A DNA stretch of 64,000 nt from IMG/VR virus record IMGVR_UViG_3300009181_000033, positions 1 to 64,000 of that record. The stretch is one strand, 5' to 3'. Below are positions 48,508-62,701 of the stretch, piece after piece. Position 1 is the first letter of the stretch. Each line of letters opens with the position of its first letter. The notes beneath the pieces were generated by a model that searched no databases, was not told where the DNA came from, and saw only the letters and a list, made by a program, of their open reading frames with translations. The position numbers and the translations under genes are program-made.

Positions 48508-48956
48508 TTTATTCCTTCCATTTTGGAAATAACGATGGACAGACCGTCCATCCAGGATTTATCATTTGGATGTAAACCATGTTTTGATTTGTTGTGTTTG
48601 CAAAATTTTAAAGAACGAAGAATGTGCTCAAATTCATCTTGCGAAAGAGCTAAATTGTATTTGGGTAATTCGCCCGGGTCTAGGATTGTTGAGTCTTTTT
48701 TATCATCTTCATGCTGCAAAAAGAAATTTGAAGTGCACGTGCAGGGTCTTATTGGAGAACAAAGAATTTCACATTTTTTACACCACCAAATACTGCCACC
48801 GCCTTCATTTATTGATTCAATTAAGGAATATTCATCTACATCAGAAGATGAAACTACCATCCCCGGATTTTTAATTAGTCTTATCAGGAGATTGTGTCCT
48901 TCTGTCGTGGCCCTCATCTCAGCCATTTTTAATTGTGTTAATATTGTTTGACTCAT
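48504..48956 (-). CDS. Hypothetical Cys-rich protein
   Basis: 150 aa; CKKC-x3-C-x5-C-x-C cluster. Confidence 0.6.
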   Translation of the reverse strand: MSQTILTQLKMAEMRATTEGHNLLIRLIKNPGMVVSSSDVDEYSLIESINEGGGSIWWCKKCEILCSPIRPCTCTSNFFLQHEDDKKDSTILDPGELPKYNLALSQDEFEHILRSLKFCKHNKSKHGLHPNDKSWMDGLSIVISKMEGIK

Positions 48957-49192
48957 TCATCATACTCTATTTTAGAAAAATGCAAATCATTGTACCAGCC
49001 AACCTTGCCTCGAGGAGTTAGAATCTTTGTGTAGGCACTACGTTCTAAAATTAGAACCGTTTCATTTTCAAAAATGACATCTACTACAAAATCTTTTTCT
49101 ATATCGTCAAATGAAATATGCCAGACATTTAAAAATGAAGACCCTATTGGTCTTACAATCAATAGTTCACCTAAGACACACTGCTCTTTCAC
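48953..49192 (-). CDS. KOW/SH3-like small protein (start re-called at GTG 49192)
   Basis: MKEQCVLGELLIV..KILTPRGKVGW; the upstream 11 codons in the ORF track derive from the IS607 right end and its flank. Confidence 0.6.
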   Translation of the reverse strand: MKEQCVLGELLIVRPIGSSFLNVWHISFDDIEKDFVVDVIFENETVLILERSAYTKILTPRGKVGWYNDLHFSKIEYDE

Positions 49193-49197
49193 AACAT

Positions 49198-49340
49198 GAT
49201 TTGAAAATGTTGGACATTTTCTCATACGTATTTTAGCTCCGAAGAGTTATTGACGTACATCTTCTGAAATCCTTGTAGAAAGTCCACGAAGTTTTCAGTT
49301 TGGGCAAACCATCTGCCCATGTGTCGTTTGGCTATGTTAG
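49198..49340 (-). ncRNA. Predicted TnpB omegaRNA (reRNA) scaffold overlapping the tnpB 3' end
   Basis: Hairpins TGGGCA/TGCCCA (49301-49319), CTGAAA/TTTCAG, CTC-TTCG-GAG (49237-49246), and terminal GAAAATGT/ACATTTTC (49203-49221) immediately before the right end. Confidence 0.55.
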
Positions 49341-50442
49341 TAGCCGAATTTAGGTCTCTATCAACTATCAAACCTGGTTCTAGTTCAACCTCTCTTATTG
49401 ATAGTTCTGAACTTAGTGTCTTGATCCCGGTCAAACAGTTGATTTGAGATGTGTAACTTTCATCGACTAGATGAAAATCTATTCCCGCATTCCTCGCTTT
49501 GTAATCAAGGAATGTTTTGAACCTAGACAACGTGCCTTGGTTCTGTGTGGACTTGTTAAGTCTTTTAGTTGAACGCTTGCCTTTTGGAAGCTTTTTAGTC
49601 TGAATATCACCAACAATCATTGTTCCAACTTTTTCTTTCAAACACGTGTCAACAATCACCTTGCTGACTTTATGCTGAAAATCTTTGTTCTTGTTGGAAT
49701 TTTTCCTAGCTAGTTTTTTATGAACTGAAGTTAACTTCTTCCAACGATTTGAACCTTTCTTCTTTTTGTCGCGAAGACTTTGAACATGTTCTTTTTGTCT
49801 TTCAGCCTTCTTGAACCTGTTGTTCTGAACTGCAAAAGGCTTCGTGGAATTTGAGAAACAGGTGGCAATTGAACTTACTCCTAAATCTATCGATAGAAAT
49901 TTTTCCCTGTCAAGATCATCATTCGTTGGCTTTTCAGAATAAGTGAAGATCAAAAAGCACTTCCCTTCTTCCTCTTTAACAACCATTGTTTTGATTGTGA
50001 CGTTTGTCACACCACACTTACGAACATAGTCTGGTAGATCTATGTTTAATTTGTGCCCATCGATCAATGAGATCTGAACGCCTTGTTCAAGGAGTTTAAA
50101 CCCGCCACTTCCGTTGTTCCAATGAAATTGGAACGTACAAAAATTCTTGTAGGACTTAAACTTATAGGGAAATTGTGCAGTTGAATCTTTCTTCTTCAAG
50201 GCATAGAATGATTTGATTGAATCAAATAGTGTTCTACTTGTGGTTTGCGCTGGGTGTGACAAGATCGTTAGTTGATTATCATTCCTGAAATTCTTATATC
50301 GCTGATTGAGTTGCTTAAAATCTTCACCTTTCTTAGCAAATTCAAGCAAATGATTGTAGAGCAACCTGTGCTCGTTTGAAAGAGTTCGAATGACAATAAC
50401 TTGTTGTCGTGAAGGAAAGATTCTAACCTTTAGAGATTTCAT
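49222..50442 (-). CDS. tnpB: TnpB RNA-guided nuclease (IS607-associated)
   Basis: KVRIFP N-terminus; RuvC-I SIDLG, RuvC-II IVGDI, RuvC-III DRDLNSATNI; YKA-x2-AG, ESYTSQ. Confidence 0.9.
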   Translation of the reverse strand: MKSLKVRIFPSRQQVIVIRTLSNEHRLLYNHLLEFAKKGEDFKQLNQRYKNFRNDNQLTILSHPAQTTSRTLFDSIKSFYALKKKDSTAQFPYKFKSYKNFCTFQFHWNNGSGGFKLLEQGVQISLIDGHKLNIDLPDYVRKCGVTNVTIKTMVVKEEEGKCFLIFTYSEKPTNDDLDREKFLSIDLGVSSIATCFSNSTKPFAVQNNRFKKAERQKEHVQSLRDKKKKGSNRWKKLTSVHKKLARKNSNKNKDFQHKVSKVIVDTCLKEKVGTMIVGDIQTKKLPKGKRSTKRLNKSTQNQGTLSRFKTFLDYKARNAGIDFHLVDESYTSQINCLTGIKTLSSELSIREVELEPGLIVDRDLNSATNIAKRHMGRWFAQTENFVDFLQGFQKMYVNNSSELKYV

Positions 50443-51052
50443 CTTTAATCTCCTCTAGGTTTTTCACAGATGCGCTGATCTTCTTCTTGTAATTTCTTGA
50501 ACCATACAATTTCATGCTGAAGTGATGAACAATTGAGATGAGATCTTCTGCAAACTCTTGTTCTTTTGTCTTGTCGGATTCAGAATCATCAACAACAACA
50601 ATCTTAAAGTTATTCATGACAGACAACTCTTCAAAAAGTTCAAACCCAAACCTAAGAAGACGATCCCTGTAATGAACCACCAGAGTTTCTATTTCGTCAT
50701 TCTTAATCAATGACAAAAGTTCTATTAGACCTTTGCGTTTATAATTTAATGCAGAGCCAAATTCAGAAATGACCTTATCAATCTTCATTCCATTAGCAAT
50801 GCAGAAATCCTTAATTCTTCTTTCTTGTTCCTTTAGAGAATTTGCCTGTTGTTGTGTTGATTCTCTACAATAAATCACGTTCAGTCGAGTCTTTGATGTT
50901 ACTCCAATAACTTGACGATAATGTTCATCTGTGTAACGTCTATGACCAGACTTTAATACGACAGGTTTCAAAGCACCCTCCTTTTCCCATCGGTAAAGAG
51001 TCTTACTCGTCAACCCGCACATCTTTGCAAATTTCGTAACTGAGTACATCAT
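50423..51052 (-). CDS. tnpA: IS607 TnpA (MerR-HTH + serine recombinase)
   Basis: KTLYRWEKEG-x-L-x5-SGHRRY HTH; IYCRES nucleophile; EFGSALNYKRKGL, RDRLLRFGFE, EDLISIVHHFS-x-KLYG-x-R. Confidence 0.93.
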   Translation of the reverse strand: MMYSVTKFAKMCGLTSKTLYRWEKEGALKPVVLKSGHRRYTDEHYRQVIGVTSKTRLNVIYCRESTQQQANSLKEQERRIKDFCIANGMKIDKVISEFGSALNYKRKGLIELLSLIKNDEIETLVVHYRDRLLRFGFELFEELSVMNNFKIVVVDDSESDKTKEQEFAEDLISIVHHFSMKLYGSRNYKKKISASVKNLEEIKDEISKG

Positions 51053-51065
51053 CTAACAATAGATA

Positions 51066-51113
51066 TTAGACAGGGTCAAAAATGTCTAAACTTTTTTCAA
51101 AATGTCTAAACTT
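51066..51113. repeat. IS607 left-end repeats
   Basis: AAAATGTCTAAACTT at 51079-51093 and 51099-51113 (20-bp period), plus an inverted TTAGACA near 51066. Confidence 0.8.
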
Positions 51114-51293
51114 GTTTAAATGGATTGGAGTATAATCATACCACCATTGCGTCGTACCATCAGTGAACAAAACATAACAACTGCTCTCACCCGATTCTGT
51201 GTTTCTCGATATATCAAGTATGATTCCTAAAGAACATTCTTTTTCAGAGAACACCCAATCATCGTAGAGACAAATCAAGTCACCTACTTTCAT
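51066..51293 (-). CDS. KOW/SH3-like small protein whose C-terminus is supplied by the IS607 left end
   Basis: MKVGDLICL..LGIILD..YVLFTDGTTQWW; residues after YTPI come from IS sequence. Confidence 0.6.
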   Translation of the reverse strand: MKVGDLICLYDDWVFSEKECSLGIILDISRNTESGESSCYVLFTDGTTQWWYDYTPIHLNKFRHFEKSLDIFDPV

Positions 51294-51490
51294 AGAATCT
51301 CTACTTCTCCTAGATAGCACCAACCAATTCCTTGTCGAATTAGGACTTTAATTAGGCGTTGGGTTTCAACAAATTCTTCAGGAAGATCAACAGCTCTACA
51401 CAAATAAGTGGTGCCGGTCCTAGTATAGGTGAGCAGACAATTTTTATTAATGGGCCTTCTTGTTGAATCACAAAATTTTTGTTTTTCCAT
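51290..51490 (-). CDS. Small hypothetical protein
   Basis: 66 aa; coupled to the next gene. Confidence 0.55.
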   Translation of the reverse strand: MEKQKFCDSTRRPINKNCLLTYTRTGTTYLCRAVDLPEEFVETQRLIKVLIRQGIGWCYLGEVEIL

Positions 51491-51790: not shown

Positions 51791-52081
51791 TTAGGCGCTT
51801 GATTTTTTCTTTTTTCTTTTTTCTTTTTTGTCGCCTGCTAGCAAAATTTCTTCGGTTGTCAATTGAACCGAATCCCCATTGTTTTCAGGCGACATCCAAG
51901 GAAAAATTTCGTGTTCATTTGTCTTCAATTGTTCAATTGAACTCAACAAACATATTTCTTGAACCTCGGATATTCTCTTTTTTACTTCATTTGTCAAATT
52001 GTTGTATGCGATCCTTTCGGCCTCAAAAGGGTTGTCAGCATCAACCAGCATTTCTGTTAAAAATGAAATTCGATACAACAT
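51791..52081 (-). CDS. Hypothetical protein (start re-called at ATG 52081)
   Basis: ATAATTA 5 nt upstream (52087-52093); basic C-terminus. Confidence 0.55.
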   Translation of the reverse strand: MLYRISFLTEMLVDADNPFEAERIAYNNLTNEVKKRISEVQEICLLSSIEQLKTNEHEIFPWMSPENNGDSVQLTTEEILLAGDKKEKRKKKKSSA

Positions 52082-52284
52082 GTTTTTAATTATTAATGTT
52101 GCCACGTTTTTATTTTTCTATATCGAATTAAATTAAAAAACGGTGTTATATCTAAATGCTAACTCTTGGAAGAAAAATAGGTTCAAATTTTTGCATGTTG
52201 TTAATTAACATTGTGGGCCCATTGCTCCCGGGAAACATAACATCAACATCATTCAGGTCATAAAAGTAGACTAGAAGTGGCAAC

Positions 52285-52980
52285 ATGGCACGAGACAATC
52301 AAAGATATAGAAAAACTTATTCTTTCTATCGACCAACGCCACAAATGTCGGCGACTGTAAATGACAATTATGTTAATGAAAAAATTAATTCTCTAGACTG
52401 GAAACACTCTGTCAGAGTGGCGACAAAAGAAAACATCGACACAGGTGCTTCTTTTTTAAGCATAGACGGAATAAATTTGGTCGTTGGGGATAAAGTCCTC
52501 GTAAAAGATCAGAACACGCCGGCAGAAAACGGAATTTATGTTTATTCCGCAGGCGGTCTCCTCGTAAGGTCAGCTGATGCAAATGAACTTACACTTTCTC
52601 CCGGTGCCACCGTTTATGTAGAAGAAGGGACAAATCAAAAATCATATTGGTCTTTAACAAGCCTTGAGCCAATAACAATTGATTCAACTGCACAAACGTG
52701 GGAAAACATCATCAGCATACCCATTTTCAAAAAAGGGAAACTCAGTGGTGAACTAGTCACATCTGAGTACGGAGGCACTCTTGACTTTTCATCTATCGGC
52801 TCCCTTAGATCTACGGCAGGAGCATATGAATCAATGGATGTCTTTTCAAACGGAATCTTGTTGGATCAGGATGATGACTATACCGTTCCCACAGTGTCAT
52901 CAATAACTTTCGGTCCAACTTTTCGTGTAATAAACACCGACAAAATTACGATAACGATTAGAAACGCAGCCTCCCCCTAA
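52285..52980 (+). CDS. Fibre adaptor-like protein (two modules shared with neighbouring fibres)
   Basis: N-half matches the 33751 N-terminus; C-half matches the 53163 C-terminus. Confidence 0.75.
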   Translation: MARDNQRYRKTYSFYRPTPQMSATVNDNYVNEKINSLDWKHSVRVATKENIDTGASFLSIDGINLVVGDKVLVKDQNTPAENGIYVYSAGGLLVRSADANELTLSPGATVYVEEGTNQKSYWSLTSLEPITIDSTAQTWENIISIPIFKKGKLSGELVTSEYGGTLDFSSIGSLRSTAGAYESMDVFSNGILLDQDDDYTVPTVSSITFGPTFRVINTDKITITIRNAASP

Positions 52981-53162
52981 ACCACTCACCATCATCTTCT
53001 CTTTGAACACACTTTTTGTGTATTTCTAGAAATGCTAGAAAAATATTTTTATTCATGGTTGAATATATTCAATAATGAATATTTATTGACGTTGAGACGT
53101 GTCGTGCACTAACGCACTTCATGCTTGACAACCTCAAAGTAATTACAAAGGAAGGTTTTTAT

Positions 53163-55457
53163 ATGGCTCAAACACATATACAACAGCATCAGATTAGCGG
53201 CTCGCTTTCAATGGACATCTCAGATAATGTCGAGCGCAATAATTTGGTTAAAGCAGGTCGCACAATTATTGACGACCTCAATTCACTTCGCTCACAGGTG
53301 AAAGGAATTCTCGGTTCAGCCGCATGGACCGACGAACAATCCATCTCCCTGCAGAACCTTAAGGCTCAGTTGACGGGAACCTTGGTTGCCAACTCAGCTT
53401 CTTTTGCCAGTGCCGTTTATGTGAGCGGTGCAGGTTCATTGGTGGTTGATGGCGCAGCTACATTTAACGAGGCAGCTGACTTCAACAATGGCATTACCGC
53501 TGATGTACTAAAGATCGATGGAGACGTCTCACAAAGACTCTACATCGTTGGTACCTCTGGTGAACTCAAAGACGAGTCAAAGCTCGTCTTCAATGGCTCA
53601 GCACTCACCGTGGACGGAGACCTCAACATCTCCGGAAGCTCAGTGTTTGCCAACCCAGCCGACTTTAACAATGGAATCACCACTGATGAACTAAAGGTTG
53701 ACGGCGACGTCTCACAACGTCTCTACATCGTTGGTGCCTCTGGTGAGCTCAAGGACGAAGAGAAGCTCGTCTTCAACGGTTCAGAACTCACAGTTGACGG
53801 CGGACTTAATGTCTCCGGAAGCATTGTGATGGGTGGGACTATCACGCTCAACGAAGCAGCCGACTTCAACAAAGGAATCACCGCTGATGAACTAAAAATC
53901 GACGGTGACACAGCCCAACGTCTCTACATCGTTGGTGCTTCTGGTGAGCTCAGGGACGAAGAGAAACTAACGTTTGATGGTTCAGAGTTAAATGTAACAG
54001 GGGATCTAGAGATCAGCGGAGCTGCTGACCTCAATGGTGCCTTGGATGTTGCTGGTCAAGTTGACCTCGCTGCCTCAGAGGTTGCCACCAACGTTCGTGG
54101 TACACTTTCAGTGGCGGAAGCCGCTGACCTCAATGGCACCCTAGACGTCGCTGGTCAAGTTGACCTCGCTGCCTCAGAGGTTGCCACCACAATCCGTGGC
54201 ACACTAAATGTTGCTGAGGAAACAACCCTCGCTTCTGCCAAGGTTTCTGACCTCACTCAGACTTATATTGTCTTCGCTGGTCTCGATGGCGCTCTTGAAG
54301 ACAGTGAGGCTCTCTCCTTCGCCTCAAACCAACTAACAGTTGGTGCTTCTGGCGCAGCTGGTTCTGTCACCATCAAGAATGCCTCTGGTGATCCAATCTT
54401 GCAAGCTGGCTCCGGTGAGCTAGTGATGCGTGACAACAATGGCGATGCAGTCTTGTACGTCAACTCGGTATCCAAGACCTTTGATCTGAAGAATGTTGAT
54501 GGAGACTCTACATTCCATGTTGCAGCAGCGTCAGGTAATACAGAGGTTGCCGGTACATTAGATTCAGCTGGTGACTTTGCGGTCGCCTCTGACAAATTCA
54601 CTGTCGCAGCAGCATCAGGTAACACCGCAGTTGCTGGTACATTAGATGTCACCGGGAACGCAATCTTTGCAGGAAACGTTCAGGTCGACGGAGATCTTCG
54701 CGTCAAGGGTTCGATGACCTACATCGACACCGTCAACATTCGCGTCGAGGATGCATTCATCTATCTCGCCACCGGCTCACTTGGATCCACCGATTCAGGT
54801 GTTGTCCTTCACGGTGGTGCTGGTGCTGATATGGACCTTGCCATCGCCCAAAAGGGCGGCTCTGGTGAGTTCATATTCGGCAAGGGCAATCGTGCCCCTG
54901 ACGGAGAAGGTGCTCTTGACGGAATGGTTCTCGTTCCTGCCAAGCTCAGTGAGGTAAAGTTCGGCTCAGCCGAAAATGCCCTCAGCGGCTCAATGTCAAT
55001 CGCCGGAAACGATATCAAGCTCGCCGCCTCGGCCGCTGCAATCGTATTCGACGATGCTTACCGTGCTTCTTCAACATACGCTGCTCCCATTAAGCTCGCC
55101 GCCTCGGCGTCCGAGTGGTCAGCGTTCCAGACACAGTATCCCGGCAAATCACTTCTCGGTGCCCTTGGTGCCGGCGGTGGTGTCGGTGTCAACTTCCGCA
55201 AGAAGATAATCATGGGGAACAATGCTAACTTCAGCGGCAATACACTTGACATCGCTGCAGCCGGCGTCGGTTCTCTTCGCAGCACCGCTCAGGCAGACTC
55301 CGACTATGGTCTCGATGTCTACCTCAACGGTGTCCTCTTGGCTCTCGGCGCTAGCGCCGACTACACAGTGCCAAGCGTATCACAAATCAGCTTCAACTAT
55401 GCTTTGAACAGCGATGACGTTCTCACAATCGTCGCCAAGAACATCGCATCTGCCTGA
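53163..55457 (+). CDS. Long beta-repeat fibre protein
   Basis: Start re-called at MAQTHI with SD AAGGAAGG; internal 61/67/55-aa and 33-aa repeats; VEDAFIYL..G trimer-fibre motif; C-terminal DVYLNGVLL..DYTV module. Confidence 0.8.
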   Translation: MAQTHIQQHQISGSLSMDISDNVERNNLVKAGRTIIDDLNSLRSQVKGILGSAAWTDEQSISLQNLKAQLTGTLVANSASFASAVYVSGAGSLVVDGAATFNEAADFNNGITADVLKIDGDVSQRLYIVGTSGELKDESKLVFNGSALTVDGDLNISGSSVFANPADFNNGITTDELKVDGDVSQRLYIVGASGELKDEEKLVFNGSELTVDGGLNVSGSIVMGGTITLNEAADFNKGITADELKIDGDTAQRLYIVGASGELRDEEKLTFDGSELNVTGDLEISGAADLNGALDVAGQVDLAASEVATNVRGTLSVAEAADLNGTLDVAGQVDLAASEVATTIRGTLNVAEETTLASAKVSDLTQTYIVFAGLDGALEDSEALSFASNQLTVGASGAAGSVTIKNASGDPILQAGSGELVMRDNNGDAVLYVNSVSKTFDLKNVDGDSTFHVAAASGNTEVAGTLDSAGDFAVASDKFTVAAASGNTAVAGTLDVTGNAIFAGNVQVDGDLRVKGSMTYIDTVNIRVEDAFIYLATGSLGSTDSGVVLHGGAGADMDLAIAQKGGSGEFIFGKGNRAPDGEGALDGMVLVPAKLSEVKFGSAENALSGSMSIAGNDIKLAASAAAIVFDDAYRASSTYAAPIKLAASASEWSAFQTQYPGKSLLGALGAGGGVGVNFRKKIIMGNNANFSGNTLDIAAAGVGSLRSTAQADSDYGLDVYLNGVLLALGASADYTVPSVSQISFNYALNSDDVLTIVAKNIASA
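53475..54218 (+). repeat. Internal tandem repeats of the fibre gene
   Basis: Three ADFN-x-GIT..QRLYIVG-x-SGEL units starting at 53475, 53658 and 53859; two near-identical 99-bp units starting at 54021 and 54120. Confidence 0.9.
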
Positions 55458-55477: not shown

Positions 55478-55509
55478 GAATGCGGGCGGGAAATTTCCCG
55501 CCCGCATTC
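55478..55509. terminator. Perfect 32-bp GC-rich palindrome, probable terminator of the fibre gene
   Basis: GAATGCGGGCGGGAAA/TTTCCCGCCCGCATTC, 21 nt after the stop. Confidence 0.75.
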
Positions 55510-55533
55510 TCTATTTGGAATATAATTAATAAC

Positions 55534-56320: not shown

Positions 56321-56321
56321 C

Positions 56322-56540
56322 TCACGCGAGTGGCCTTAACCCTTCCAGGCGCACCCAACCCACCATTCCATCCACTAGCACCCTGTAATATGGAACATCC
56401 GTATTGGAAAAACCGAAATCTAAACAAACTGCAATCGATTTCTCGCTAAATGTTCCCACAAAAATTCGATGATGCCCAATGATATTCTTATAGATCTGTC
56501 TATCACCAAATGCAGACATCAACAAATCGCCAGGCTTCAT
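56322..56540 (-). CDS. KOW/SH3-like small protein
   Basis: MKPGDLL..RVLVDGMVGWV. Confidence 0.65.
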   Translation of the reverse strand: MKPGDLLMSAFGDRQIYKNIIGHHRIFVGTFSEKSIAVCLDFGFSNTDVPYYRVLVDGMVGWVRLEGLRPLA

Positions 56541-56546
56541 GAGTCC

Positions 56547-56576
56547 ACATTACCACAGCCGAAACAACATTTACAC
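56547..56576 (-). promoter_or_regulatory. Early/middle promoter candidate GTGTAA-N18-TAATGT
   Basis: Ends 6 nt upstream of ATG 56540. Confidence 0.55.
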
Positions 56577-56843
56577 CTCACGTAATAATGCATAACTAAC
56601 GTAACCAATTCCCTGTGGAAACATCACTTTTGCCCACTTGAAATCGGCTCGCGTCTGAACTGAAATGACCTCGAGAAGCACGCCAGGAGTTCGTAACGGA
56701 ACTAATATCTTCTCTCGAGGTATATCCACACCACGTGAAACAGAAGGTGAAGAGATATCGGTATACACGTTAGAGTACTTCACACCAGCATCATCTGTGG
56801 CGTTATAAGAACTATGAACGTGTACGAGATCACCGATGTTCAT
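56571..56843 (-). CDS. KOW/SH3-like small protein
   Basis: MNIGDLVHV..GVLLEV..KVMFPQGIGYV. Confidence 0.65.
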   Translation of the reverse strand: MNIGDLVHVHSSYNATDDAGVKYSNVYTDISSPSVSRGVDIPREKILVPLRTPGVLLEVISVQTRADFKWAKVMFPQGIGYVSYALLREV

Positions 56844-57391: not shown

Positions 57392-57687
57392 CCCTTATAG
57401 AACTGCCCGAGGTGAAGATCTTCCTCAACCTGCATGATGAGTTCCTCAATTTTTTCACCGAGAACTTCGCAAGCCGAATCGCACTGTGCTTCCCAAACAG
57501 GTTTACCACCGCTGGCATCCATGCTTGGATCCATGGGATCAAACTGGGATTTCCAACCATCACAAACCGCATCTAACATGGTTTGTAACTCGGCTGAACC
57601 GGTACCATACCCCAGTTCCTCCTTGAGGGTTGCTCTCTTAACTTCTTCTGCAATAATCCTACGTAGTTGTGTTGCGGTTAGTTTCAT
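57388..57687 (-). CDS. Putative internal head protein (QLRxII leader family)
   Basis: MKLTATQLRRIIAEEVKRATLKEE; ATAATTA 6 nt upstream (57694-57700). Confidence 0.65.
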   Translation of the reverse strand: MKLTATQLRRIIAEEVKRATLKEELGYGTGSAELQTMLDAVCDGWKSQFDPMDPSMDASGGKPVWEAQCDSACEVLGEKIEELIMQVEEDLHLGQFYKG

Positions 57688-57741
57688 AAACTTTAATTAT
57701 TCCTCACTTCTCATTTTTCAAGTTTATCACGGAGTTTCGTG

Positions 57742-58188
57742 TCAATTTTCCTCGCCCGGCCACTTCAGCGCGGCCTTGCACAGATCATAAACACTACAAT
57801 CATCATCACCCTGTTCAAAGGCATGGGATTTCAAACAATCCGCTTCAAGAATCACTTGGATAACACTCCTCATCTCCCTCAGTTTTTCTCGAAGCACGGA
57901 ACAATGGTAGTATCCAGCTTCCCCACAATGGCAAGGTTTCTCAGCCAACTCATCATCGGCTAGAATCCCATCCTTATTCCTCTCCCACCATTCCTTGGCC
58001 TGAAGAATCATGTTTTCGTTGATCTTATCTGTTCCATGAACTTCATTGAGAAATCCTACCTCCTCAAACTCCATCACCGGATCCTCAAATCCAAACAACT
58101 CACCTAGCTTGAAACTAACCTCTTCCTCACCAATCCTACAACAGATGAGATCGTTATTGTTGAACAGGAACCCGTATGAATCACTCAT
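57742..58188 (-). CDS. Hypothetical protein
   Basis: 148 aa; CHC-x6-HC cluster; coupled start. Confidence 0.6.
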   Translation of the reverse strand: MSDSYGFLFNNNDLICCRIGEEEVSFKLGELFGFEDPVMEFEEVGFLNEVHGTDKINENMILQAKEWWERNKDGILADDELAEKPCHCGEAGYYHCSVLREKLREMRSVIQVILEADCLKSHAFEQGDDDCSVYDLCKAALKWPGEEN

Positions 58189-58367
58189 GATACTTTCCTA
58201 AGAATTGAAGATGAATATCTAAAAATCTTTCCCCTGCTCTCATCGTTCATCATCAACACATTGTATAAATGCGTTCCACTATTAAGTTCTATGATCACGG
58301 CAAGTGGAGGTACGGAAAAACCAGGATGAAGAACCTGAACAAGATCACCTGGGGTTAAATCACTCAT
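58185..58367 (-). CDS. KOW-like small protein
   Basis: TPGDLVQV..AVIIE..YNVLM. Confidence 0.6.
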   Translation of the reverse strand: MSDLTPGDLVQVLHPGFSVPPLAVIIELNSGTHLYNVLMMNDESRGKIFRYSSSILRKVS

Positions 58368-58663
58368 ATTTCCTTCCTACCCATCAAGGAACTCCAAGGA
58401 TCCAATGTAACCCTACCTGGTTTCTTATTCTCATCCATGATGTGTTGTGATAGTGATGCTCCAATTCTCACATTCAACTCATGGCATTCCTCCCTACATT
58501 CCTGTAGGTTTCCTTCGAACTGTTCCAATGTTTGAAACCCCGGAACCTGAAGAACAACATAATAGAAATCCTCCATTTCACCACTGGAATTCTTAAACTG
58601 CCCGGCCGGAATCACGGTGAAAGGTTTCCAATCACTCAACATTCTTCTCCATCTCCTTTTCAA
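58364..58663 (-). CDS. Hypothetical protein
   Basis: 99 aa ORF in the coupled early array. Confidence 0.5.
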   Translation of the reverse strand: MKRRWRRMLSDWKPFTVIPAGQFKNSSGEMEDFYYVVLQVPGFQTLEQFEGNLQECREECHELNVRIGASLSQHIMDENKKPGRVTLDPWSSLMGRKEI

Positions 58664-58889
58664 TATTTACCCATTGAAGCACTAAACTTTTCAATCCCTC
58701 CCAGGGGTAAAGAATGTGATGGTTGCTGTTCTCGGTGGAGAACTTCACAAAGTAATTCACCTTGGAGTTTCCATCATCACCGATCTCAACCGATCCAACT
58801 ATCATCTCCATGGTAACATTGGTGCTCGTGGCGGTTGGGCCTGATACAGGAATCACCTTGTTGTTCTCTAGATCGATTTTATCACTCAT
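58632..58889 (-). CDS. Hypothetical protein
   Basis: 85 aa ORF in the coupled early array. Confidence 0.55.
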   Translation of the reverse strand: MSDKIDLENNKVIPVSGPTATSTNVTMEMIVGSVEIGDDGNSKVNYFVKFSTENSNHHILYPWEGLKSLVLQWVNIEKEMEKNVE

Positions 58890-59094
58890 TATTCATTTCC
58901 TCCGTTTTATTCAAACACTCCACCGAACAATAACTCCTACCACCAACACTATACCCCAATGCAAGGTTGAACCTCACCTCACAATCCGGATTGAAACAAG
59001 GAAAATCCTTTGCGTTTGGAATCTCCGATGTTTTCATTCCCTTGAACTCATCGGTTAACCACCATGATACCTTACCACAGTATTCCTCACACAT
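58882..59094 (-). CDS. Small zinc-finger protein
   Basis: CFNPDC..YCSVEC. Confidence 0.6.
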   Translation of the reverse strand: MCEEYCGKVSWWLTDEFKGMKTSEIPNAKDFPCFNPDCEVRFNLALGYSVGGRSYCSVECLNKTEEMNNE

Positions 59095-59558
59095 CAGCGA
59101 ACATCTTTCCTATGTGAAAACCAATCTGCTTGGCGGGTTGAATTGTTACAATAACCGCCAGTACCATTTTCCCTGCGAGTTTTACAAACCGAATCTTTAC
59201 AATTCAAACACATCTCTCCCGTTCCAGTATCAACAGTAGGATGACAGGAACATCGAGCATAATACTCACTCATCAGTGAACCTCCTCGGTTCTCCTTTAT
59301 CTTCCACGTTGTTTTTGAGGATAAGAGAGATTTGATCTCATCCAACACCAGATCGCCGTATTCCGATTGTTTGATTTCAAATACCATTGTGTTTCCGATG
59401 TGGGTTGGTTGGTAAACATCCAGGGATTTGAGGTGATTCTTTTTGAGGAACAACCCAACCTTCCTGTGAACCTCCCACAGTTCTGCATAACTTCCTTTTT
59501 GATCTGGAGATTCAATGGTTATCTTCAAAGTTCCTCCCCATACTCTCCCACCTATCAA
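59094..59558 (-). CDS. Hypothetical protein, possibly two fused genes
   Basis: Internal SD GGAGG before MSEYYARCSCHP..CLNC..C. Confidence 0.45.
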   Translation of the reverse strand: MIGGRVWGGTLKITIESPDQKGSYAELWEVHRKVGLFLKKNHLKSLDVYQPTHIGNTMVFEIKQSEYGDLVLDEIKSLLSSKTTWKIKENRGGSLMSEYYARCSCHPTVDTGTGEMCLNCKDSVCKTRRENGTGGYCNNSTRQADWFSHRKDVR

Positions 59559-59715
59559 TCATAACAATCCGATCCTTTACCAGATCATAGAAGAATTGGT
59601 ACTGGAATTCCGAGGTGAAATCTACCTCAAAATCCAGGTAATCCTCCGGGTTTGGATTCTCCACCCCGTTATGGGTTCTTGGTGGATCCAGAACAACTCT
59701 AATGGTTCTCAGCAT
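59512..59715 (-). CDS. Small hypothetical protein
   Basis: 67 aa, coupled array. Confidence 0.55.
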   Translation of the reverse strand: MLRTIRVVLDPPRTHNGVENPNPEDYLDFEVDFTSEFQYQFFYDLVKDRIVMIDRWESMGRNFEDNH

Positions 59716-59897
59716 GGTTCTTCACCCCAGTTAAAGTTCACTTCATCGAGCACAGAATCATATTTCGATTGCAATTCCCCAAGTTTCTCTCTCAAGAACT
59801 TGATGCAAACCCTTGGATTTGTGTGGGAATCCATGTTATCAAGTGGATCAAGTTCACCTTCACACTCCAAACAATATCTCACCACCTTCTTCTTCAT
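59709..59897 (-). CDS. Small zinc-binding/coiled protein
   Basis: CLEC..H-x4-C. Confidence 0.55.
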   Translation of the reverse strand: MKKKVVRYCLECEGELDPLDNMDSHTNPRVCIKFLREKLGELQSKYDSVLDEVNFNWGEEPC

Positions 59898-59908
59898 GGT
59901 TCCATCCT

Positions 59909-60121
59909 TCAGTATTCCTTAATGATTTTCTTGGTGGTTTTGAAACCATCCCAATCCACAACAACCTTCTCAATGATGACTGGATCATCTGGATCATAAT
60001 AGGGAGATTCCCGAATCCATGTTTCGGAAAACTTCTCCACATCACCCTTCTCTCCACTTTGTGCAAGGATCTTTCCTGATTTGGTGGAGGAAATGAAGTA
60101 GTGATGCCCTCTGTTCTTCAT
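59909..60121 (-). CDS. Small hypothetical protein
   Basis: 70 aa, coupled array. Confidence 0.55.
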   Translation of the reverse strand: MKNRGHHYFISSTKSGKILAQSGEKGDVEKFSETWIRESPYYDPDDPVIIEKVVVDWDGFKTTKKIIKEY

Positions 60122-60136
60122 GGTTCTACCTTACCA

Positions 60137-60418
60137 TCATCCTGCGGAACTTTGCACAACTTCCAGATATTCGGCTGGAATCCAGCCGGTATTTCCGTTG
60201 TTCACCATGATCTTATGGGAACGAGGAATTCCATTCATATCGAAGTGATCCTCAAGAACCACACCGGTGTTTTCACGGGTGAATCCTGAGTTATTTGCCC
60301 GAAACTCGCACTTGGGGTCCACGTACAGGTACGAGTGTTTCACGTACTTATCCTTGAAGAGAACTACGGAATCACCAATCTTCTTGATTGAAGTTGAGAG
60401 GGTGAACTTATTCCTCAT
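60137..60418 (-). CDS. SH3-like small protein
   Basis: KIGDSVV..TGVVLE..KIMVNNGNTGWIPAEYLEVV. Confidence 0.7.
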   Translation of the reverse strand: MRNKFTLSTSIKKIGDSVVLFKDKYVKHSYLYVDPKCEFRANNSGFTRENTGVVLEDHFDMNGIPRSHKIMVNNGNTGWIPAEYLEVVQSSAG

Positions 60419-60450
60419 GATTCAATTCTATCACCTCTCGGTTTCACTTT

Positions 60451-60693
60451 TCACCATCCCCAACCGGTATAAATCCCATCAGAAACAAATGGATAATTTG
60501 GATTTCTTCCCCTAGGAACTTCGTGTTCAAAGATTCCGTAGGAGGAATGAACCACGAGAATCCTTGAGATTCCATCCGAAGGAATTCCTGGAAGTTCACC
60601 TAGGATTGTGTAGATGCAGTTTCGCATTCTTGAAAGAATCACATCACCAGCCTGCAATTCCCATTCCAGGGCAATTCCACCAATTGATCTCAT
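60451..60693 (-). CDS. Small protein, paralog of 62432..62701
   Basis: ALEWELQAGDVIL..IYTILGELPGIP vs ALESELQVGDVIL..IYTIVGELPGIP. Confidence 0.7.
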   Translation of the reverse strand: MRSIGGIALEWELQAGDVILSRMRNCIYTILGELPGIPSDGISRILVVHSSYGIFEHEVPRGRNPNYPFVSDGIYTGWGW

Positions 60694-60830
60694 TACCCCA
60701 CCAGGTGTTTATCTGATTTCCACTCCGAAATGAGGAGCCAAAGGAAATTCCAAAATGATTCTCTGATGTACAGATAACCACCATGGTAACAACACCAACA
60801 CCTACCTTCACTAATTTCACCGGGTTTCAT
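60693..60830 (-). CDS. 45-aa protein, paralog of 62704..62886 (not in ORF track)
   Basis: MKPGEISEGRCWCCYHGGYLYIRESFWNFLWLLISEWKSDKHLVG*. Confidence 0.7.
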   Translation of the reverse strand: MKPGEISEGRCWCCYHGGYLYIRESFWNFLWLLISEWKSDKHLVG

Positions 60831-61083
60831 TGATCACCTTCACCCAACCTTCAAAGATCCATCCAGGCCCCTGAGGGAAAAGTGCATACAAGAATGTTCG
60901 ATCATCAAGCAGGTTTCCTGGTTTAACCGTTTGCTTCTTTAGGATGATTCCGGTTGTACCTTTCGGGATTTGAAATGATGGCCCTAACATTCCTACGTTG
61001 GCTCGCCAAGGAATTTTGGCACTTGAGTAAATGGTACCAACCTCATTGGCATGGAACACGATCATATCACCGGGTTGTTTCAT
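60817..61083 (-). CDS. KOW/SH3-like small protein
   Basis: MKQPGDMIV..TGIILK..YALFPQGPGWI. Confidence 0.65.
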   Translation of the reverse strand: MKQPGDMIVFHANEVGTIYSSAKIPWRANVGMLGPSFQIPKGTTGIILKKQTVKPGNLLDDRTFLYALFPQGPGWIFEGWVKVINETR

Positions 61084-61113
61084 GGTTCCAACGTACCTCT
61101 GTTCAGCGAAACA

Positions 61114-61611
61114 TCATGCTTCAATCTTTCTCATTCCCCAAATCTTCTGAGGATCGTACTCCAGAGAATATCGAATGGTTCCTCCTTCGGATTTCTCTGG
61201 AGTTTGCGATTCGATATCCCGGATTAGTTGTGCGTGATACTCAGGATCCAACTCGATTTCCCATAAGATATCTTCAGCATCCTCCACCACCACAGGAATG
61301 CCTCTTCTTGGTTCCACGTTTGGCTCAGAATAATCTTCTTCAGCCTCATCGGTTTCTACCCCAACGAATTGAATGAATTTCTGGAACCATTCCAGGATCT
61401 CGGAATCACCGCCAACAGATAGAAACGAAGAATCCCATTCGTTCGAGCGGTGGTGCCAGAAATCGATTGCCTCAGATTCACTAATGGTAACCCCTAGTTC
61501 CCTTTTGAGCACATCCTGGATCCGGTGAACATCCTCTAGATCATGGTACATCCCAGAGGTACCATTTCGGCACTGAAAGGTTTTTGTTACAATATCTTGA
61601 TTGATTTTCAC
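61114..61611 (-). CDS. Hypothetical protein
   Basis: 165 aa, acidic. Confidence 0.6.
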   Translation of the reverse strand: MKINQDIVTKTFQCRNGTSGMYHDLEDVHRIQDVLKRELGVTISESEAIDFWHHRSNEWDSSFLSVGGDSEILEWFQKFIQFVGVETDEAEEDYSEPNVEPRRGIPVVVEDAEDILWEIELDPEYHAQLIRDIESQTPEKSEGGTIRYSLEYDPQKIWGMRKIEA

Positions 61612-61913
61612 CGTTTCTCCTCCAACTTCTCATAATCCTTGATGATTTCCTCCCAATGATCCACCAAAAGTTCACCCAATTTTTCACCAACCAAACCAAG
61701 GTTAACCTTCTTTAGTTCCTCCAGGTTTGGTGAATATGAACCACCTAGAGGGAAATCCTTGAAGTGATGATGTTCATCTGAATCAATTCCTCGCCTGATT
61801 AATTCAGATAGCAGGTTGGCAAACCACACCTCGGTGTTAAAATTCCTTCCCTCTACATCAACATATAGATTGGAATCACCACCAAATTCTTTACAGGGAT
61901 TATCTATGCTCAT
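61608..61913 (-). CDS. Hypothetical protein
   Basis: 101 aa, ATGA-coupled. Confidence 0.6.
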   Translation of the reverse strand: MSIDNPCKEFGGDSNLYVDVEGRNFNTEVWFANLLSELIRRGIDSDEHHHFKDFPLGGSYSPNLEELKKVNLGLVGEKLGELLVDHWEEIIKDYEKLEEKR

Positions 61914-62237
61914 CCTTCTTCTCCTTCAACTTTCACCATTTCATTGATGTAATATGGAATTGCACCTTGTGGAAGAGGTTCAACGGGGAATAAACTCTTT
62001 GCAACCTGATTGTAGTTAATCCTACCTCCGGGCCTCCCCAATGTATCGAGGAAGGGATTGTAAAAATCACCCCATAAAACCCTCCACCTGATTATTGGAG
62101 TTTTTTCTCACAATGGTTCCGGTGGAACTGGAGTAAAGGAAACGAACCATATCTCCAATTTTCCAATCAACCTCATCGAGTAGTTTTCCATCGAGGGTGA
62201 GGAGGGAGGAGATGAATACCGTGTTTATTTCACTCAT
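61910..62237 (-). pseudogene. KOW-domain gene with a single-base insertion (about 62080-62082); C-terminus resembles a capsid-protein peptide
   Basis: ATGA overlaps at both ends; 328 nt = 109 codons + 1; removing one G gives KIGDMVRF..QVEVLWGD..INYNQVAKSLFPVEPLPQGAIPYY. Confidence 0.7.
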
Positions 62238-62419
62238 GATTCTTTCTCCAGTTCCCCTGGGGCGATGATTTGTTCCGGACGGAAATAAATCTGTTTCCCA
62301 TCGGGTAGCAGGGTGAGGTAGGATTGAATCCCATAGGAATTCCACCTTATATCCAGGATTATCCCGGTTCTTGTTGGCTCACCAAAAAAGTTTGTAAAAC
62401 ACAGATCACCAACATCCAT
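62234..62419 (-). CDS. KOW-like small protein
   Basis: MDVGDLCF..TGIILD..YLTLLPDG. Confidence 0.65.
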   Translation of the reverse strand: MDVGDLCFTNFFGEPTRTGIILDIRWNSYGIQSYLTLLPDGKQIYFRPEQIIAPGELEKES

Positions 62420-62431
62420 AACCCTATCCTA

Positions 62432-62701
62432 TCATGGTTCCTCAGGGTTTTGCACCGTTCCTAGAACAATATAGGTTCCATCGGTTACGTAAGAATAGTT
62501 CTCACACCTTCTCATGGGAACTTCGTGTTTAAAAACCGTTCCAGGCCGGGAAGAATGAATCAATAGGATCTTTGAAACACCATCACCAGGAATTCCAGGA
62601 AGTTCACCAACGATTGTATAAATTGTGTTTCTGGATTGGGATAGGATAACATCACCAACCTGTAATTCACTCTCCAGGGCAACGGAACCGATCTCCCTCA
62701 C
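62432..62701 (-). CDS. Small protein, paralog of 60451..60693
   Basis: Shares LQ-x-GDVIL, IYTI-x-GELPGIP and HEVP motifs. Confidence 0.7.
   Translation of the reverse strand: MREIGSVALESELQVGDVILSQSRNTIYTIVGELPGIPGDGVSKILLIHSSRPGTVFKHEVPMRRCENYSYVTDGTYIVLGTVQNPEEP

What the first reader, a model, noticed from the sequence alone, without database searches (positions are those of the whole stretch)
48953..62701. Expansion of about 12 KOW/SH3-barrel microproteins
Seen: the pattern (K/Q)-x-GD-(L/M/V)-hydrophobic..G-(I/V)-(I/L/V)..(Y/K)-x-(V/L)-(L/M/F)..G-x-GW recurs in ORFs at 48953, 51066, 56137 (pseudo), 56322, 56571, 58185, 60137, 60451, 60817, 61910, 62234 and 62432. 60137 has an SH3-like GWIPAEYLEVV end. 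Their sequences are highly divergent. Inference: a diversified small-barrel toolkit (NusG/ribosomal KOW mimics, nucleic-acid binders or anti-defence binders) undergoing birth and death.
Basis: partly seen in the sequence, partly recalled or inferred. Interest (0 to 1): 0.6.

Follow-up and report, generated by a model that had tools for sequence, protein, structure and literature searches.

The report
Expanded SH3-like microprotein family, jumbo phage
A 298-kb freshwater jumbo phage carries about 35-40 tiny genes, nine or ten of them in this window, for one uncatalogued family of SH3-like beta-barrel proteins arranged as swappable cassettes; they are most likely a varied set of binders for host or rival proteins, but that function is untested.

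Summary

**Window members**
- Seven ORFs are significant members by an independent profile: 48953, 51066, 51290 (new), 56322, 56571, 60137 and 60817.
- Two short ORFs are probable members: 62234 and 58185.
- One motif-bearing gene, 61910-62237, is frameshifted.
- Not supported: 60451 and 62432, which form a separate two-copy family, and the 'pseudo' at 56137.

**Whole genome**
- The genome is an IMG/VR record of 297,894 bp with terminal repeats. It holds 25-28 members at E<0.01 and about 40 at E<1.
- Nearly all lie on the minus strand between 48.9 and 81.1 kb. A back-to-back core array of 17 genes sits at 66.0-70.6 kb, just beyond the window.

**Fold and family**
- Models of two members give an SH3-like barrel.
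- The nearest named family is the bacterial SH3 domain SH3_3 (profile-profile 94.8%).
- Pfam KOW finds nothing. Pfam, PHROGs and NCBIfam do not hold the family.

**Elsewhere and dynamics**
- Similar arrays occur on at least 47 IMG/VR loci.
- The barrel core is conserved and the RT and n-Src loops are hypervariable.
- Orthologs are under purifying selection, and near-identical strains differ in cassette order and content.

Function is unknown. My best guess is a diversified set of intracellular protein binders.

The parts
48953..49225 (-). Family member, 90 aa. The C-terminal half carries the family motifs (ends ...GKVGWY...). Its start overlaps the stop of the IS607 TnpB gene.
   Evidence: External profile E 5e-5; out-of-window profile E 1.6e-3.
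51066..51293 (-). Family member, 75 aa counted from the MKVGDL start. The longest ORF runs up to 51323.
   Evidence: E 3e-7 and 1.8e-7. The start at 51293 overlaps the stop of the upstream ORF.
51290..51490 (-). It has only the C-terminal half motifs (...GIGW...).
   Evidence: External profile E 2.3e-4; profile positions 58-80 matched.
56322..56540 (-). Family member, 72 aa, starting MKPGDLL.
   Evidence: E 4e-8 and 2.6e-5.
56571..56843 (-). Family member, 90 aa, starting MNIGDLV.
   Evidence: E 5e-12. The ESM Atlas's own model (pTM 0.68) has SH3_3 proteins and the family's viral clusters as neighbours. dN/dS against the ortholog in L009 is 0.22.
58185..58367 (-). Probable short member, 60 aa, with a short RT loop and no GW motif.
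   Evidence: Profile E 0.19. Its alignment of 25 metagenomic homologs against the family gives hhalign 69%, E 4e-5. dN/dS is 0.42.
60137..60418 (-). Family member, 93 aa, with an N-terminal extension and the GWIPAEYLEVV end.
   Evidence: E 6e-14. It has a 73%-identical metagenomic relative, P0028.
60817..61083 (-). Family member, 88 aa, starting MKQPGDMI. This is the member that was modelled.
   Evidence: E 2e-13. AF2 pLDDT 83.4, pTM 0.74. Fold matches. It sits in a different place in variant strains.
62234..62419 (-). Probable short member, 61 aa, starting MDVGDL.
   Evidence: Profile E 0.22. Its alignment of 11 homologs against the family gives hhalign 89%, E 2e-6 over 49 columns.
61910..62237 (-). 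Two pieces in different frames match consecutive parts of the intact 105-aa paralog at 66028-66345. It shares only the KxGDMVRF strand with the family.
   Evidence: BLASTP E 6e-6 and 2e-8 to residues 1-51 and 66-104 of the paralog; three-frame reading; hhalign 65% over 12 columns only. An assembly error was not excluded.
60451..60693 (-). It is one of two copies of a separate small family; fold unresolved.
   Evidence: 62% identical to 62432-62701; hhalign to the family 0.3%; AF2 pLDDT 49. It is conserved in metagenomes at 68-99% identity, with dN/dS 0.10-0.19.
62432..62701 (-). Second copy of the 60451 family; not shown to belong to the SH3-like family.
   Evidence: DNA 72% identical over 218 nt.
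60817..60830 (-). A 14-nt dual-coding junction. The tail ...NETR-stop of 60817-61083 is read from the same bases as the MKPGE start of the next ORF (60693-60830).
   Evidence: Coordinates. The general rule and codon bias are: GGT is 81% of the motif's Gly codons against 32% elsewhere, and 100 of 175 genes have an upstream ORF ending there. A strain-level breakpoint lies at 60828.
49222..51052 (-). IS607-type element (MerR-HTH serine recombinase plus TnpB) lying between two family members.
   Evidence: Pfam Resolvase 8e-20, MerR_1 1e-9, OrfB_IS605 1e-16, Cas12f1-like_TNB 3e-11.

Best explanation
**What is shown**
- The window holds the first part of a large expansion of one family of stand-alone microproteins of 55-105 aa with an SH3-like beta-barrel fold. 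They are remote relatives of the bacterial SH3 domain SH3_3.
- The genome is a 298-kb freshwater jumbo myophage. It has about 35-40 members, nearly all on the minus strand at 48.9-81.1 kb.
- Many members are back to back, with start and stop codons overlapping by 4 or 14 nt.
- The barrel core is conserved: MKPGDLV strand 1, xIGIVLE strand 2, WxKVL strand 3, GxGW strand 4 and LExV strand 5.
- The RT loop between strands 1 and 2 and the n-Src loop between strands 2 and 3 vary freely in sequence and length.
- Orthologs are under purifying selection.
- Near-identical strains differ in cassette order and content, with breakpoints at the conserved gene starts.

**What is inferred**
- The proteins are made inside the infected cell; they have no signal peptides.
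- Each uses its own RT and n-Src loop surface, the usual ligand-binding face of SH3 domains, to bind a different host or rival-element protein.
- Together they would form a repertoire for host takeover or counter-defence. It would be kept diverse by recombination at the shared gene junctions.
For: **Family and expansion**
- Two independent profiles find the members, and reversed or shuffled controls are clean.

**Fold**
- The AF2 model has pLDDT 83 and an SH3 strand order, including a turn of helix before the last strand.
- Foldseek's best matches are Abl, Pex13 and RasGAP SH3 domains.
- All 50 best VIA matches are SH3-like barrels, Z 6-7.9.
- Atlas neighbours are SH3_3 proteins and unnamed viral clusters.

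**Link to SH3_3**
- The family profile hits SH3_3-repeat cell-wall hydrolases.
- hhalign gives 94.8%, E 5e-8.

**Conserved core, variable loops**
- Column information is 2-4 bits in the strands and 0.2-0.6 bits in profile positions 13-44 and 52-61, with insertions of up to 24 residues.

**Real genes**
- dN/dS is 0.1-0.4.
- Conserved homologs occur in many metagenomes.

**Cassette turnover**
- The shared junction shows an 81% GGT codon bias.

**Protein rather than nucleic-acid ligands**
- Median pI is 5.5, and 23 of 35 members are acidic.

**Precedents**
- Phage G carries about 35 copies of a zinc ribbon (PMC7824862).
- From my own knowledge, the acidic SH3-fold antirepressor CarS binds a repressor by mimicking DNA.
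Against: - No target, expression time or location is known, and no RNA run holds the region.
- The promoter scan shows no enrichment: 32 sites against 36 expected.
- The closest named relatives, SH3b domains, bind cell wall rather than cytoplasmic proteins.
- Only two members have a confident or moderately confident structure model. For the rest the fold rests on homology.
- Structural Z scores are under 8, and the tool warns that this level may reflect only a common arrangement.
- The SH3_3 domains used for hhalign came from proteins the family profile had itself picked, which biases that test towards a match.
- Charge is a weak predictor of ligand type.
- Structural genes at 52.3-55.5 kb sit inside the region, so a virion role is not excluded.
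Confidence: 0.45

Rival explanations
1. The proteins are nucleic-acid-binding small barrels, like KOW, Tudor or Sso7d. They would act on transcription or translation as NusG/Spt5 or ribosomal-protein mimics, or coat phage DNA.
For: - NusG and Spt5 KOW domains are among the best fold matches (Z 7.1, rmsd 1.3 over 51 residues; Z 6.4-6.6).
- The first strand, xPGDxVxV, resembles the start of KOW motifs (my own knowledge).
- The profile search of PDB sequences lists eL21 among weak hits.
Against: - Pfam KOW finds nothing in any frame of the genome at E<=1, while all 14 control genomes match.
- No member hit KOW in Pfam at E<=1.
- Most members are acidic; only 5 of 35 have pI above 8.
- About 40 divergent copies are hard to reconcile with one conserved nucleic-acid partner.
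Confidence: 0.12
2. The proteins are virion-associated or assembly proteins: packaged internal proteins, decoration modules or adaptor modules.
For: - Structural or fibre-like genes (52285-55457, plus strand) lie inside the region, and baseplate genes lie upstream in the window.
- Jumbo phages package many small proteins (my own knowledge).
Against: - The members are on the opposite strand from the structural genes.
- They sit among IS elements and unknown small ORFs.
- Cassette content differs between near-identical strains, which is unusual for structural parts.
- No PHROG structural family is hit.
Confidence: 0.12
3. The proteins are clients, adaptors or regulators of the membrane-anchored AAA ATPase encoded directly upstream of the core array. 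The shared MKPGD N-terminus would be the recognition tag.
For: - The gene at 70560-71558 (PF00004 AAA, 8e-13) overlaps the start of the first gene of the 17-gene array.
- Homologs lie near arrays in 11 of the loci examined.
- The N-terminal heptapeptide is the most conserved part of the family.
Against: - Most array loci examined show no such ATPase within the stretch held.
- The loci are related phages, so this may be plain synteny.
- The N-terminus is modelled as part of the barrel, with pLDDT 95.
- Its DNA conservation is partly explained by the dual-coding junction.
Confidence: 0.08
4. The proteins are free cell-wall-binding SH3b modules that help lysis or adsorption.
For: - The nearest named family is SH3_3, whose known members are mostly wall-binding domains of hydrolases.
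- SH3b domains of autolysins and endolysins are top fold matches.
Against: - The members have no signal peptide or membrane segment; they start MKPGD.
- They have no fused or adjacent lytic enzyme.
- There are about 40 divergent copies.
- Pfam SH3_3 itself does not detect them.
Confidence: 0.05
5. The pattern is a chance motif in non-coding or spurious ORFs.
For: - The ORFs are very short.
- Pairwise BLAST finds almost no similarity between them.
Against: - See the motif and profile statistics with controls.
- The fold model is confident.
- dN/dS is below 0.5.
- There are 207 related clusters in public proteins and arrays on many other phage contigs.
Confidence: 0.01

Closest known systems
Bacterial SH3 domain (SH3_3, Pfam PF08239; SH3b)
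   Same: - Five-stranded SH3-like barrel.
- Shared sequence pattern from strand 2 to strand 5 (hydrophobic strand, W-x-K-V, G-x-G-W, L-x-x-V).
- hhalign 94.8%, E 5e-8 over 37 columns.
- The family profile pulls out SH3_3-repeat hydrolases.
- Atlas structural neighbours carry SH3_3.
   Different: - The members are stand-alone proteins with no signal peptide and no enzyme partner.
- Their first strand, MKPGDLV, is their own.
- The RT loop ranges from almost absent to about 45 residues.
- The Pfam SH3_3 model does not detect any of 25 members at E<=1.
KOW motif domains (NusG, Spt5, ribosomal L24; Pfam PF00467)
   Same: - SH3-like barrel of the same size.
- NusG KOW matches at Z 7.1, rmsd 1.3 over 51 residues.
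- A G-D-x-V-x-V style first strand (my own knowledge).
   Different: - No sequence-level match: Pfam KOW finds nothing in the genome at E<=1.
- Most members are acidic.
- They are not attached to NGN or ribosomal contexts.
Small stand-alone SH3-like phage proteins: YorP of the Bacillus SPbeta prophage (PDB 2HEQ) and DUF4314 proteins
   Same: - Single-domain phage proteins of 60-90 aa with the same barrel.
- YorP matches at Z 6.0.
- DUF4314 proteins of Microbacterium phage Hendrix and Salinivibrio phage CW02 are among the best BFVD matches.
   Different: - No sequence similarity was found.
- Pfam lists neither family for any member.
- Expansion to tens of copies is not, to my knowledge, described for them.
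Lineage-specific expansion of a small domain in a jumbo phage: about 35 zinc-ribbon proteins in Bacillus phage G
   Same: Tens of copies of one small domain in one large phage genome, with function proposed but not tested (PMC7824862, read).
   Different: - The fold is different: zinc ribbon against SH3-like barrel.
- Here similar arrays recur on many unrelated-looking environmental contigs.
- Here the cassettes share a dual-coding junction.
Eukaryotic-type SH3 domains (Abl, spectrin, Pex13)
   Same: - Best Foldseek matches, probability 0.95-0.99 and TM by target about 0.6.
- Best, though non-significant, PDB sequence-profile hits (E 0.3-1).
- The end of 60137, GWIPAEYL, resembles the G-x-x-P-x-x-Y motif of SH3 domains.
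   Different: - E-values are not significant.
- There is no ALYDY motif and no evidence of proline-peptide binding.

Membership tests
SH3-like small beta-barrel fold | Five antiparallel strands forming a closed barrel, with a long RT loop after strand 1 and a turn of helix before strand 5. | tested here: met
   - AF2 model of 60817-61083: strands at 7-10, 44-53, 62-69, 72-77 and 81-83, a hairpin (16-19, 36-39) in the RT loop, and a helical turn at 78-80. pLDDT 83.4.
- All 50 best VIA matches are SH3-like barrels.
- The Atlas model of 56571-56843 has SH3_3 and NifZ neighbours.
- Only two members were modelled; the rest are covered by homology.
Bacterial SH3 domain SH3_3 (PF08239) | A score above Pfam's gathering threshold for PF08239. 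| tested here: not met
   None of 25 members matches SH3_3 at E<=1. Only sub-threshold hits to other SH3 models appear (SH3_1, SH3_2, SH3_9, SH3_YKFC_2nd, SH3_CYT4; E 0.07-0.1).
Bacterial SH3 domain SH3_3 (PF08239) | Remote homology by profile-profile comparison. | tested here: met
   - hhalign of A1 against nine Pfam-delimited SH3_3 domains: 94.8%, E 5e-8, 37 columns.
- Caveat: those domains came from proteins the family profile had found.
Bacterial SH3 domain SH3_3 (PF08239) | Typical context: secreted or wall-associated, fused to or beside a cell-wall hydrolase. | tested here: not met
   The members are stand-alone ORFs that start MKPGD with no signal peptide. No neighbouring gene examined hit a lytic-enzyme family in Pfam.
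KOW motif (PF00467) | A match to the Pfam KOW model. | tested here: not met
   No match in six frames of the whole genome at E<=1, while all 14 control genomes match. There is none among 25 members.
KOW motif (PF00467) | Binding to ribosome, RNA polymerase or nucleic acid. | not testable with these tools
   Only indirect evidence: median pI 5.5, with 5 of 35 members basic.
The MKPGD SH3-like microprotein family defined here | A significant score against a profile built from members of other genomes. | tested here: met
   - Seven window ORFs score between E 6e-14 and 2e-4.
- 58185 and 62234 are marginal (E about 0.2) but supported by hhalign.
- 60451, 62432 and 56137 are not met.

The most novel reading that the evidence does not exclude
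The arrays may be a recombination-ready cassette library.
- Each SH3-like binder gene is joined to the next by a conserved 14-nt dual-coding overlap. The upstream gene ends xAT GAA RCC NGG TGA. The same bases, in another frame, read ATG AAR CCN GGT GAY for the downstream start.
- This overlap would both couple translation and serve as the crossover site. Co-infecting phages could then swap, reorder and replace cassettes.
- The result would be a population-level system for diversifying counter-defence or takeover binders. It would be comparable in logic to polymorphic toxin cassettes, but built on a scaffold of about 70 aa.
Probability: 0.2. Interest if true: 0.85.

Novelty: new variant of a known kind. 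Interest (0 to 1): 0.62.

Why it matters
Large phages carry long stretches of tiny genes of unknown function.

**What this case offers**
- About 40 of those genes in one genome, and hundreds on other environmental phage contigs, reduce to one scaffold with a recognisable fold.
- They share a conserved core, variable ligand-facing loops and a shared junction where strains swap cassettes.

**What it makes possible**
- It gives a concrete, testable model for part of phage 'dark matter': a library of small binders.
- It names a family that Pfam, PHROGs and NCBIfam lack.
- If the members bind host defence or takeover targets, they would be a ready source of small natural inhibitors.
- It would also be a new example of how phages diversify such tools.

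**If the proteins turn out to be structural or to bind nucleic acid**
- The expansion and the dual-coding junction would still be unusual genome architecture.

Tried and rejected
**Searches that found nothing**
- No DNA match of the region in GenBank phages.
- No tblastn match for two members in GenBank phages.
- Pfam, PHROGs and NCBIfam give no family above threshold.
With 60817-61083 it found nothing.
- The host search through the IS607 TnpB in genome contigs found nothing. The host remains unknown.
- Literature searches found no description of such an SH3-like expansion in phages. The only parallel is the zinc-ribbon expansion in phage G.
- No RNA run holds the region, so expression was not tested.

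**Tests that failed or were inconclusive**
- The AF2 model of 60451-60693 with 15 homologs has pLDDT 49, so it was not used for fold search.
- hhalign of that family to the SH3-like family gives 0.3%.
- The 'pseudo at 56137' has no profile hit in any frame.

**Ideas rejected**
- I first took a conserved stretch upstream of several members (GTGCAAAC...GTGGTAAG) for a promoter. It is the coding 3' tail of the preceding gene plus duplicated junction DNA.
- The promoter scan shows no enrichment: 32 sites against 36 expected.
- Single pattern hits in bacterial genomes are mostly chance occurrences of MKPGDLV in long proteins such as FecR-like or AbrB-like ones.
- Arrays on bins named Microbacteriaceae, Micrococcales or Bdellovibrionota sit on short contigs. 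I take them as probable phage contigs, not host evidence.

**Not used or not needed**
- Complex prediction was not used, because no specific pair is claimed to bind.
- Read laying was given 5,701 letters.
- No alternative genetic code was used.

Full report
**Context**

The window is the first 64 kb of an IMG/VR virus record of 297,894 bp with direct terminal repeats, rated complete.
- It encodes a baseplate wedge protein, fibre-like structural proteins, glycosyltransferases and an ATP-dependent DNA ligase. That makes it a jumbo myophage.
- It has no DNA match among GenBank phages.
- Near-identical or related sequence is held by freshwater and lake metagenomes from 16 studies.
- The finding lies in a minus-strand region of small ORFs. 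Almost none of them has a Pfam or PHROG match.

**Is the pattern real?**

I called all ORFs of the genome and counted the N-terminal motif x-x-G-D-[LMVI]-[VILMC] in the first 40 residues.
- It occurs in 24 of 207 small genes. Shuffled proteins give a mean of 0.9 and a maximum of 5.
- Of the 24, 23 lie between 48 and 82 kb, all on the minus strand (hypergeometric 5e-14).
- Pairwise BLAST sees almost nothing between the ORFs, so I used profiles kept independent of the ORFs under test.
- A profile built from 16 members outside the window finds window ORFs 51066, 60817, 56322, 56571, 60137 and 48953, with E from 2e-7 to 2e-3. Iteration converges on 25 members.
- A second profile used 110 metagenomic proteins less than 40% identical to any ORF of this genome. 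It gives 60137 6e-14, 60817 2e-13, 56571 5e-12, 56322 4e-8, 51066 3e-7, 48953 5e-5, and 51290-51490 2e-4.
- Reversed and shuffled ORFs give no hit at E<0.01 and 1-2 at E<1. The real ORFs give 25-28 and 40-41. So most marginal hits are probably real too.

- 62234-62419 and 58185-58367 score about E 0.2. Each is conserved in metagenomes (11 and 25 homologs). As alignments they match the family profile at 89% and 69%. I count them as probable short members.
- The ORF at '61910' is the 3' piece of a gene at 61910-62237 that is split by a frameshift. Its two pieces match residues 1-51 and 66-104 of the intact paralog at 66028-66345. That paralog family shares only the KPGDMVR strand with the main family. 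I could not check the frameshift against reads.
- 60451-60693 and 62432-62701 are 62% identical to each other and conserved elsewhere. They show no profile similarity to the family (0.3%), and their model is unreliable (pLDDT 49). Their membership is not shown.
- The 'pseudo' at 56137 gives no hit in a six-frame stop-to-stop scan.

**Extent of the expansion**

The expansion continues well beyond the window.
- From 66,028 to 70,563 there are 17 members or motif-bearing genes back to back, interrupted only by two unrelated small genes (69474-69994). Most start MKPGD[LM]V.
- More members lie at 74.0-74.4, 78.3-79.6 and 80.3-81.1 kb. A few lie at 106.9-107.4 and 145.3-145.7 kb.
- Members are 13-35% identical to the first one. 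Apart from the 60451/62432 pair they share no DNA similarity.

**Fold**

- An AF2 model of 60817-61083, using the 25 paralogs as its alignment, has pLDDT 83.4 and pTM 0.74. Its strand order is that of an SH3 domain, with a hairpin in the RT loop and a helical turn before the last strand.
- Foldseek against the PDB gives no E below 1e-3. Its best matches are Abl, Pex13 and RasGAP SH3 domains (probability 0.95-0.99), then PetP, Tudor and PWWP.
- The Foldseek-independent VIA search lists only SH3-like barrels among its 50 best, Z 6.0-7.9. They include the Hpy99I N-domain, SH3b domains of autolysins and endolysins, NusG and Spt5 KOW, NdhS, PsaE, Tudor domains and YorP. The tool warns that Z under 8 can reflect a common arrangement only, so the uniformity of the list is what counts.
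- In the ESM Atlas the nearest models are unnamed viral clusters of 78-88 aa (TM 0.72-0.80) and bacterial SH3_3 proteins.
- The Atlas's own single-sequence model of a second member, 56571-56843 (pTM 0.68), has the same viral clusters plus SH3_3 and NifZ as neighbours.

**Relation to known families**

- The family profile searched against 1.84 billion representative proteins finds 207 clusters at E<=1e-3. Most are stand-alone proteins of 70-100 aa aligned from residue 1.
- About fifteen long hits are cell-wall hydrolases with repeated SH3_3 domains.
- Nine Pfam-delimited SH3_3 domains from those proteins match the family profile at 94.8%, E 5e-8, over strands 2-5. This test is biased by how the domains were chosen.
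- The Pfam SH3_3 model itself detects no member.
- Pfam KOW finds nothing in the genome at E<=1, while all 14 control genomes match.
- The family is therefore a new, remote branch of the SH3-like barrels. It is closest to bacterial SH3b and is KOW-like only in fold. PHROGs and NCBIfam do not hold it.

**Anatomy**

Aligned to the external profile, information is high in these places:
- M-K-P-G-D-L-V;
- a mid-loop L-Y and F;
- E-I-G-I-V-L-E;
- W-x-K-V-L-x-P;
- G-I-G-W-I;
- L-E-V-V.

It is 0.2-0.6 bits in profile positions 13-44 (RT loop) and 52-61 (n-Src loop), where insertions of up to 24 residues occur. Short members have almost no RT loop. In SH3 domains those two loops flank the ligand site (established knowledge). 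Members have no signal peptide and are mostly acidic: median pI 5.5, with 23 of 35 below 6.5.

**Elsewhere**

- A scan of IMG/VR for the DNA of the MKPGDLVR start found 64 loci. Of these, 55 hold profile hits and 47 hold two or more.
- Arrays reach 15 members in 12 kb (L046), 13 in 8.6 kb (L051) and 12 in 8 kb (L043). Contigs run up to 284 kb.
- In species genomes, arrays appear only on short MAG contigs, which are probably phage DNA.
- Many further small ORFs in these loci show the same x-G-x-L-V ... G-h-V pattern below the profile's reach.

**Dynamics**

- Orthologs in related contigs give dN/dS of 0.22 (56571), 0.42 (58185) and 0.10-0.19 (the 60451 family), similar to neighbouring genes. 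For 60817-61083 there were no amino-acid changes and dS was only 0.03, so that pair gives no usable ratio.
- Many members have orthologs at 58-100% identity in other samples, while paralogs within the genome are no more than 35% identical. The copies are therefore old, not a recent burst.
- Content still turns over. In two lake runs of another study, contigs that are 100% identical on one side replace 60829-61150 (gene 60817-61083) with 286 other letters. Other contigs place that gene directly after position 60440.
- Contig L009 is an assembled form of this variant. Its order is the 3' end of 60451-60693, then 60817-61083, then a different 57-aa member, then four unrelated genes, and it rejoins the window at 59105. 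Gene 56322-56540 is replaced there by another member-like ORF.
- The breakpoints lie at the conserved gene starts.

**The junction**

- Many cassettes overlap the next by 14 nt. The upstream gene ends (N/D/S/H)-E-(T/A)-(R/G)-stop, read from xAT GAA RCC NGG TGA. The same bases in another frame encode M-K-P-G-D.
- The Gly codon of the motif is GGT in 211 of 262 genes (81%), against 32% of Gly codons elsewhere in the same genes.
- In 100 of 175 genes with the motif at the N-terminus, an upstream open frame ends at that embedded TGA.
- In the window this junction is at 60817-60830. Beyond it there are junctions at 68015-68028 and 69474-69487.
- I infer that the junction couples translation and offers a shared crossover site. 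Neither role is shown.

**Function**

Nothing here shows what the proteins do.
- My preferred reading is a set of intracellular protein binders that differ in their loop surfaces and are used in takeover or counter-defence. It rests on the scaffold-plus-variable-loop anatomy, the acidic charge, the setting among small unknown genes and IS elements, and the strain-level turnover.
- Rivals are nucleic-acid binders of the KOW or Tudor type, virion or assembly proteins, partners of the AAA ATPase encoded directly upstream of the core array, and free wall-binding SH3b modules.
- Each rival is weighed in its own section of this report.

**Novelty**

The fold is known, and so are expansions of small domains in jumbo phages (PMC7824862). 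The new points are:
- a family that is not catalogued;
- its scale, about 40 copies here;
- its recurrence as arrays across many environmental phage contigs;
- the dual-coding junction with cassette shuffling.

**Limits**

- Only two members have usable models, and structural scores are moderate.
- The host is unknown, and no expression data exist.
- dN/dS rests on few short pairs.
- The joints come from metagenome contigs laid at 80% likeness, though L009 confirms them independently.

Noticed in passing
window 47187-47483, 47492-47800, 56840-57391, 57388-57687, 62887-63099 (all minus strand); also genome 86721-86912 and 87075-87473: A second paralog family in the same region. These unrelated small proteins share the N-terminus MK(I/L)T-x-SQLRRII-x-EE. 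No Pfam match was found for the two tested. A homolog occurs in the related contig L006.
   Followed up: partly
window 51791-52105 (minus); genome 69743-69994 and 72223-72489; DNA repeat 69492-69731 ~ 71948-72187: A third small paralog family with the motif LYR-x-TF-x-TE-x-LV...AE-x-IGY. Beside it lies a 240-nt duplicated segment at 84% identity.
   Followed up: no
window 63245-63685 (minus) and 63651-64000+ (plus); genome 74597-75688; repeat 63210-63242 ~ 75727-75760: An IS200/IS605 element: Y1 transposase (Pfam 1e-36) with a TnpB-like ORF that runs off the window. Another TnpB-like ORF lies at 74.6-75.7 kb. A 34-nt stretch at 94% identity lies beside both and is possibly an element end. With the IS607 at 49222-51052, three IS elements sit inside the array region.
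   Followed up: partly
L003:6560-7558 (genome 70560-71558, minus): A membrane-anchored classical AAA ATPase (PF00004, 8e-13) whose stop overlaps the start of the first gene of the 17-gene core array. Homologs lie near arrays in 11 of the loci examined.
   Followed up: partly
window 60693-60830 and 62704-62886 (minus): Two paralogous small ORFs of 45 and 60 aa. They end ...DKHLVG, and one starts MKPGE. Each lies directly upstream of one copy of the 60451/62432 family, so the duplicated unit is a two-gene cassette.
   Followed up: no
window 53121-55457 (plus); genome 121.7-122.5 kb: A 778-aa fibre-like structural protein with internal DNA repeats at 77-86% identity. The repeats are shared with a second locus at about 122 kb. 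It shares a C-terminal region with the 231-aa protein at 52285-52980.
   Followed up: no
window 55478-55509: A perfect 14-bp G+C-rich palindrome, terminator-like on both strands. It lies at the junction of 53121-55457 and 55480-56127 and overlaps the start of the latter.
   Followed up: no
genome 152.3-156.8 kb; L009:5207-9637: The phage encodes a PrkA / SpoVR / DUF444 gene trio. In the related contig L009 the trio lies directly beside the small-gene array, whereas here it is about 95 kb away. That implies a large rearrangement between relatives. PrkA is 85% identical, while flanking small genes are 93-100% identical.
   Followed up: partly
window 56300-62000 and relatives L006-L010: Ribosome-binding sites upstream of many genes read GAGGTGA, a strong Shine-Dalgarno sequence. 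This argues against hosts that make little use of such sites, an inference from general knowledge. The host was not identified.
   Followed up: no
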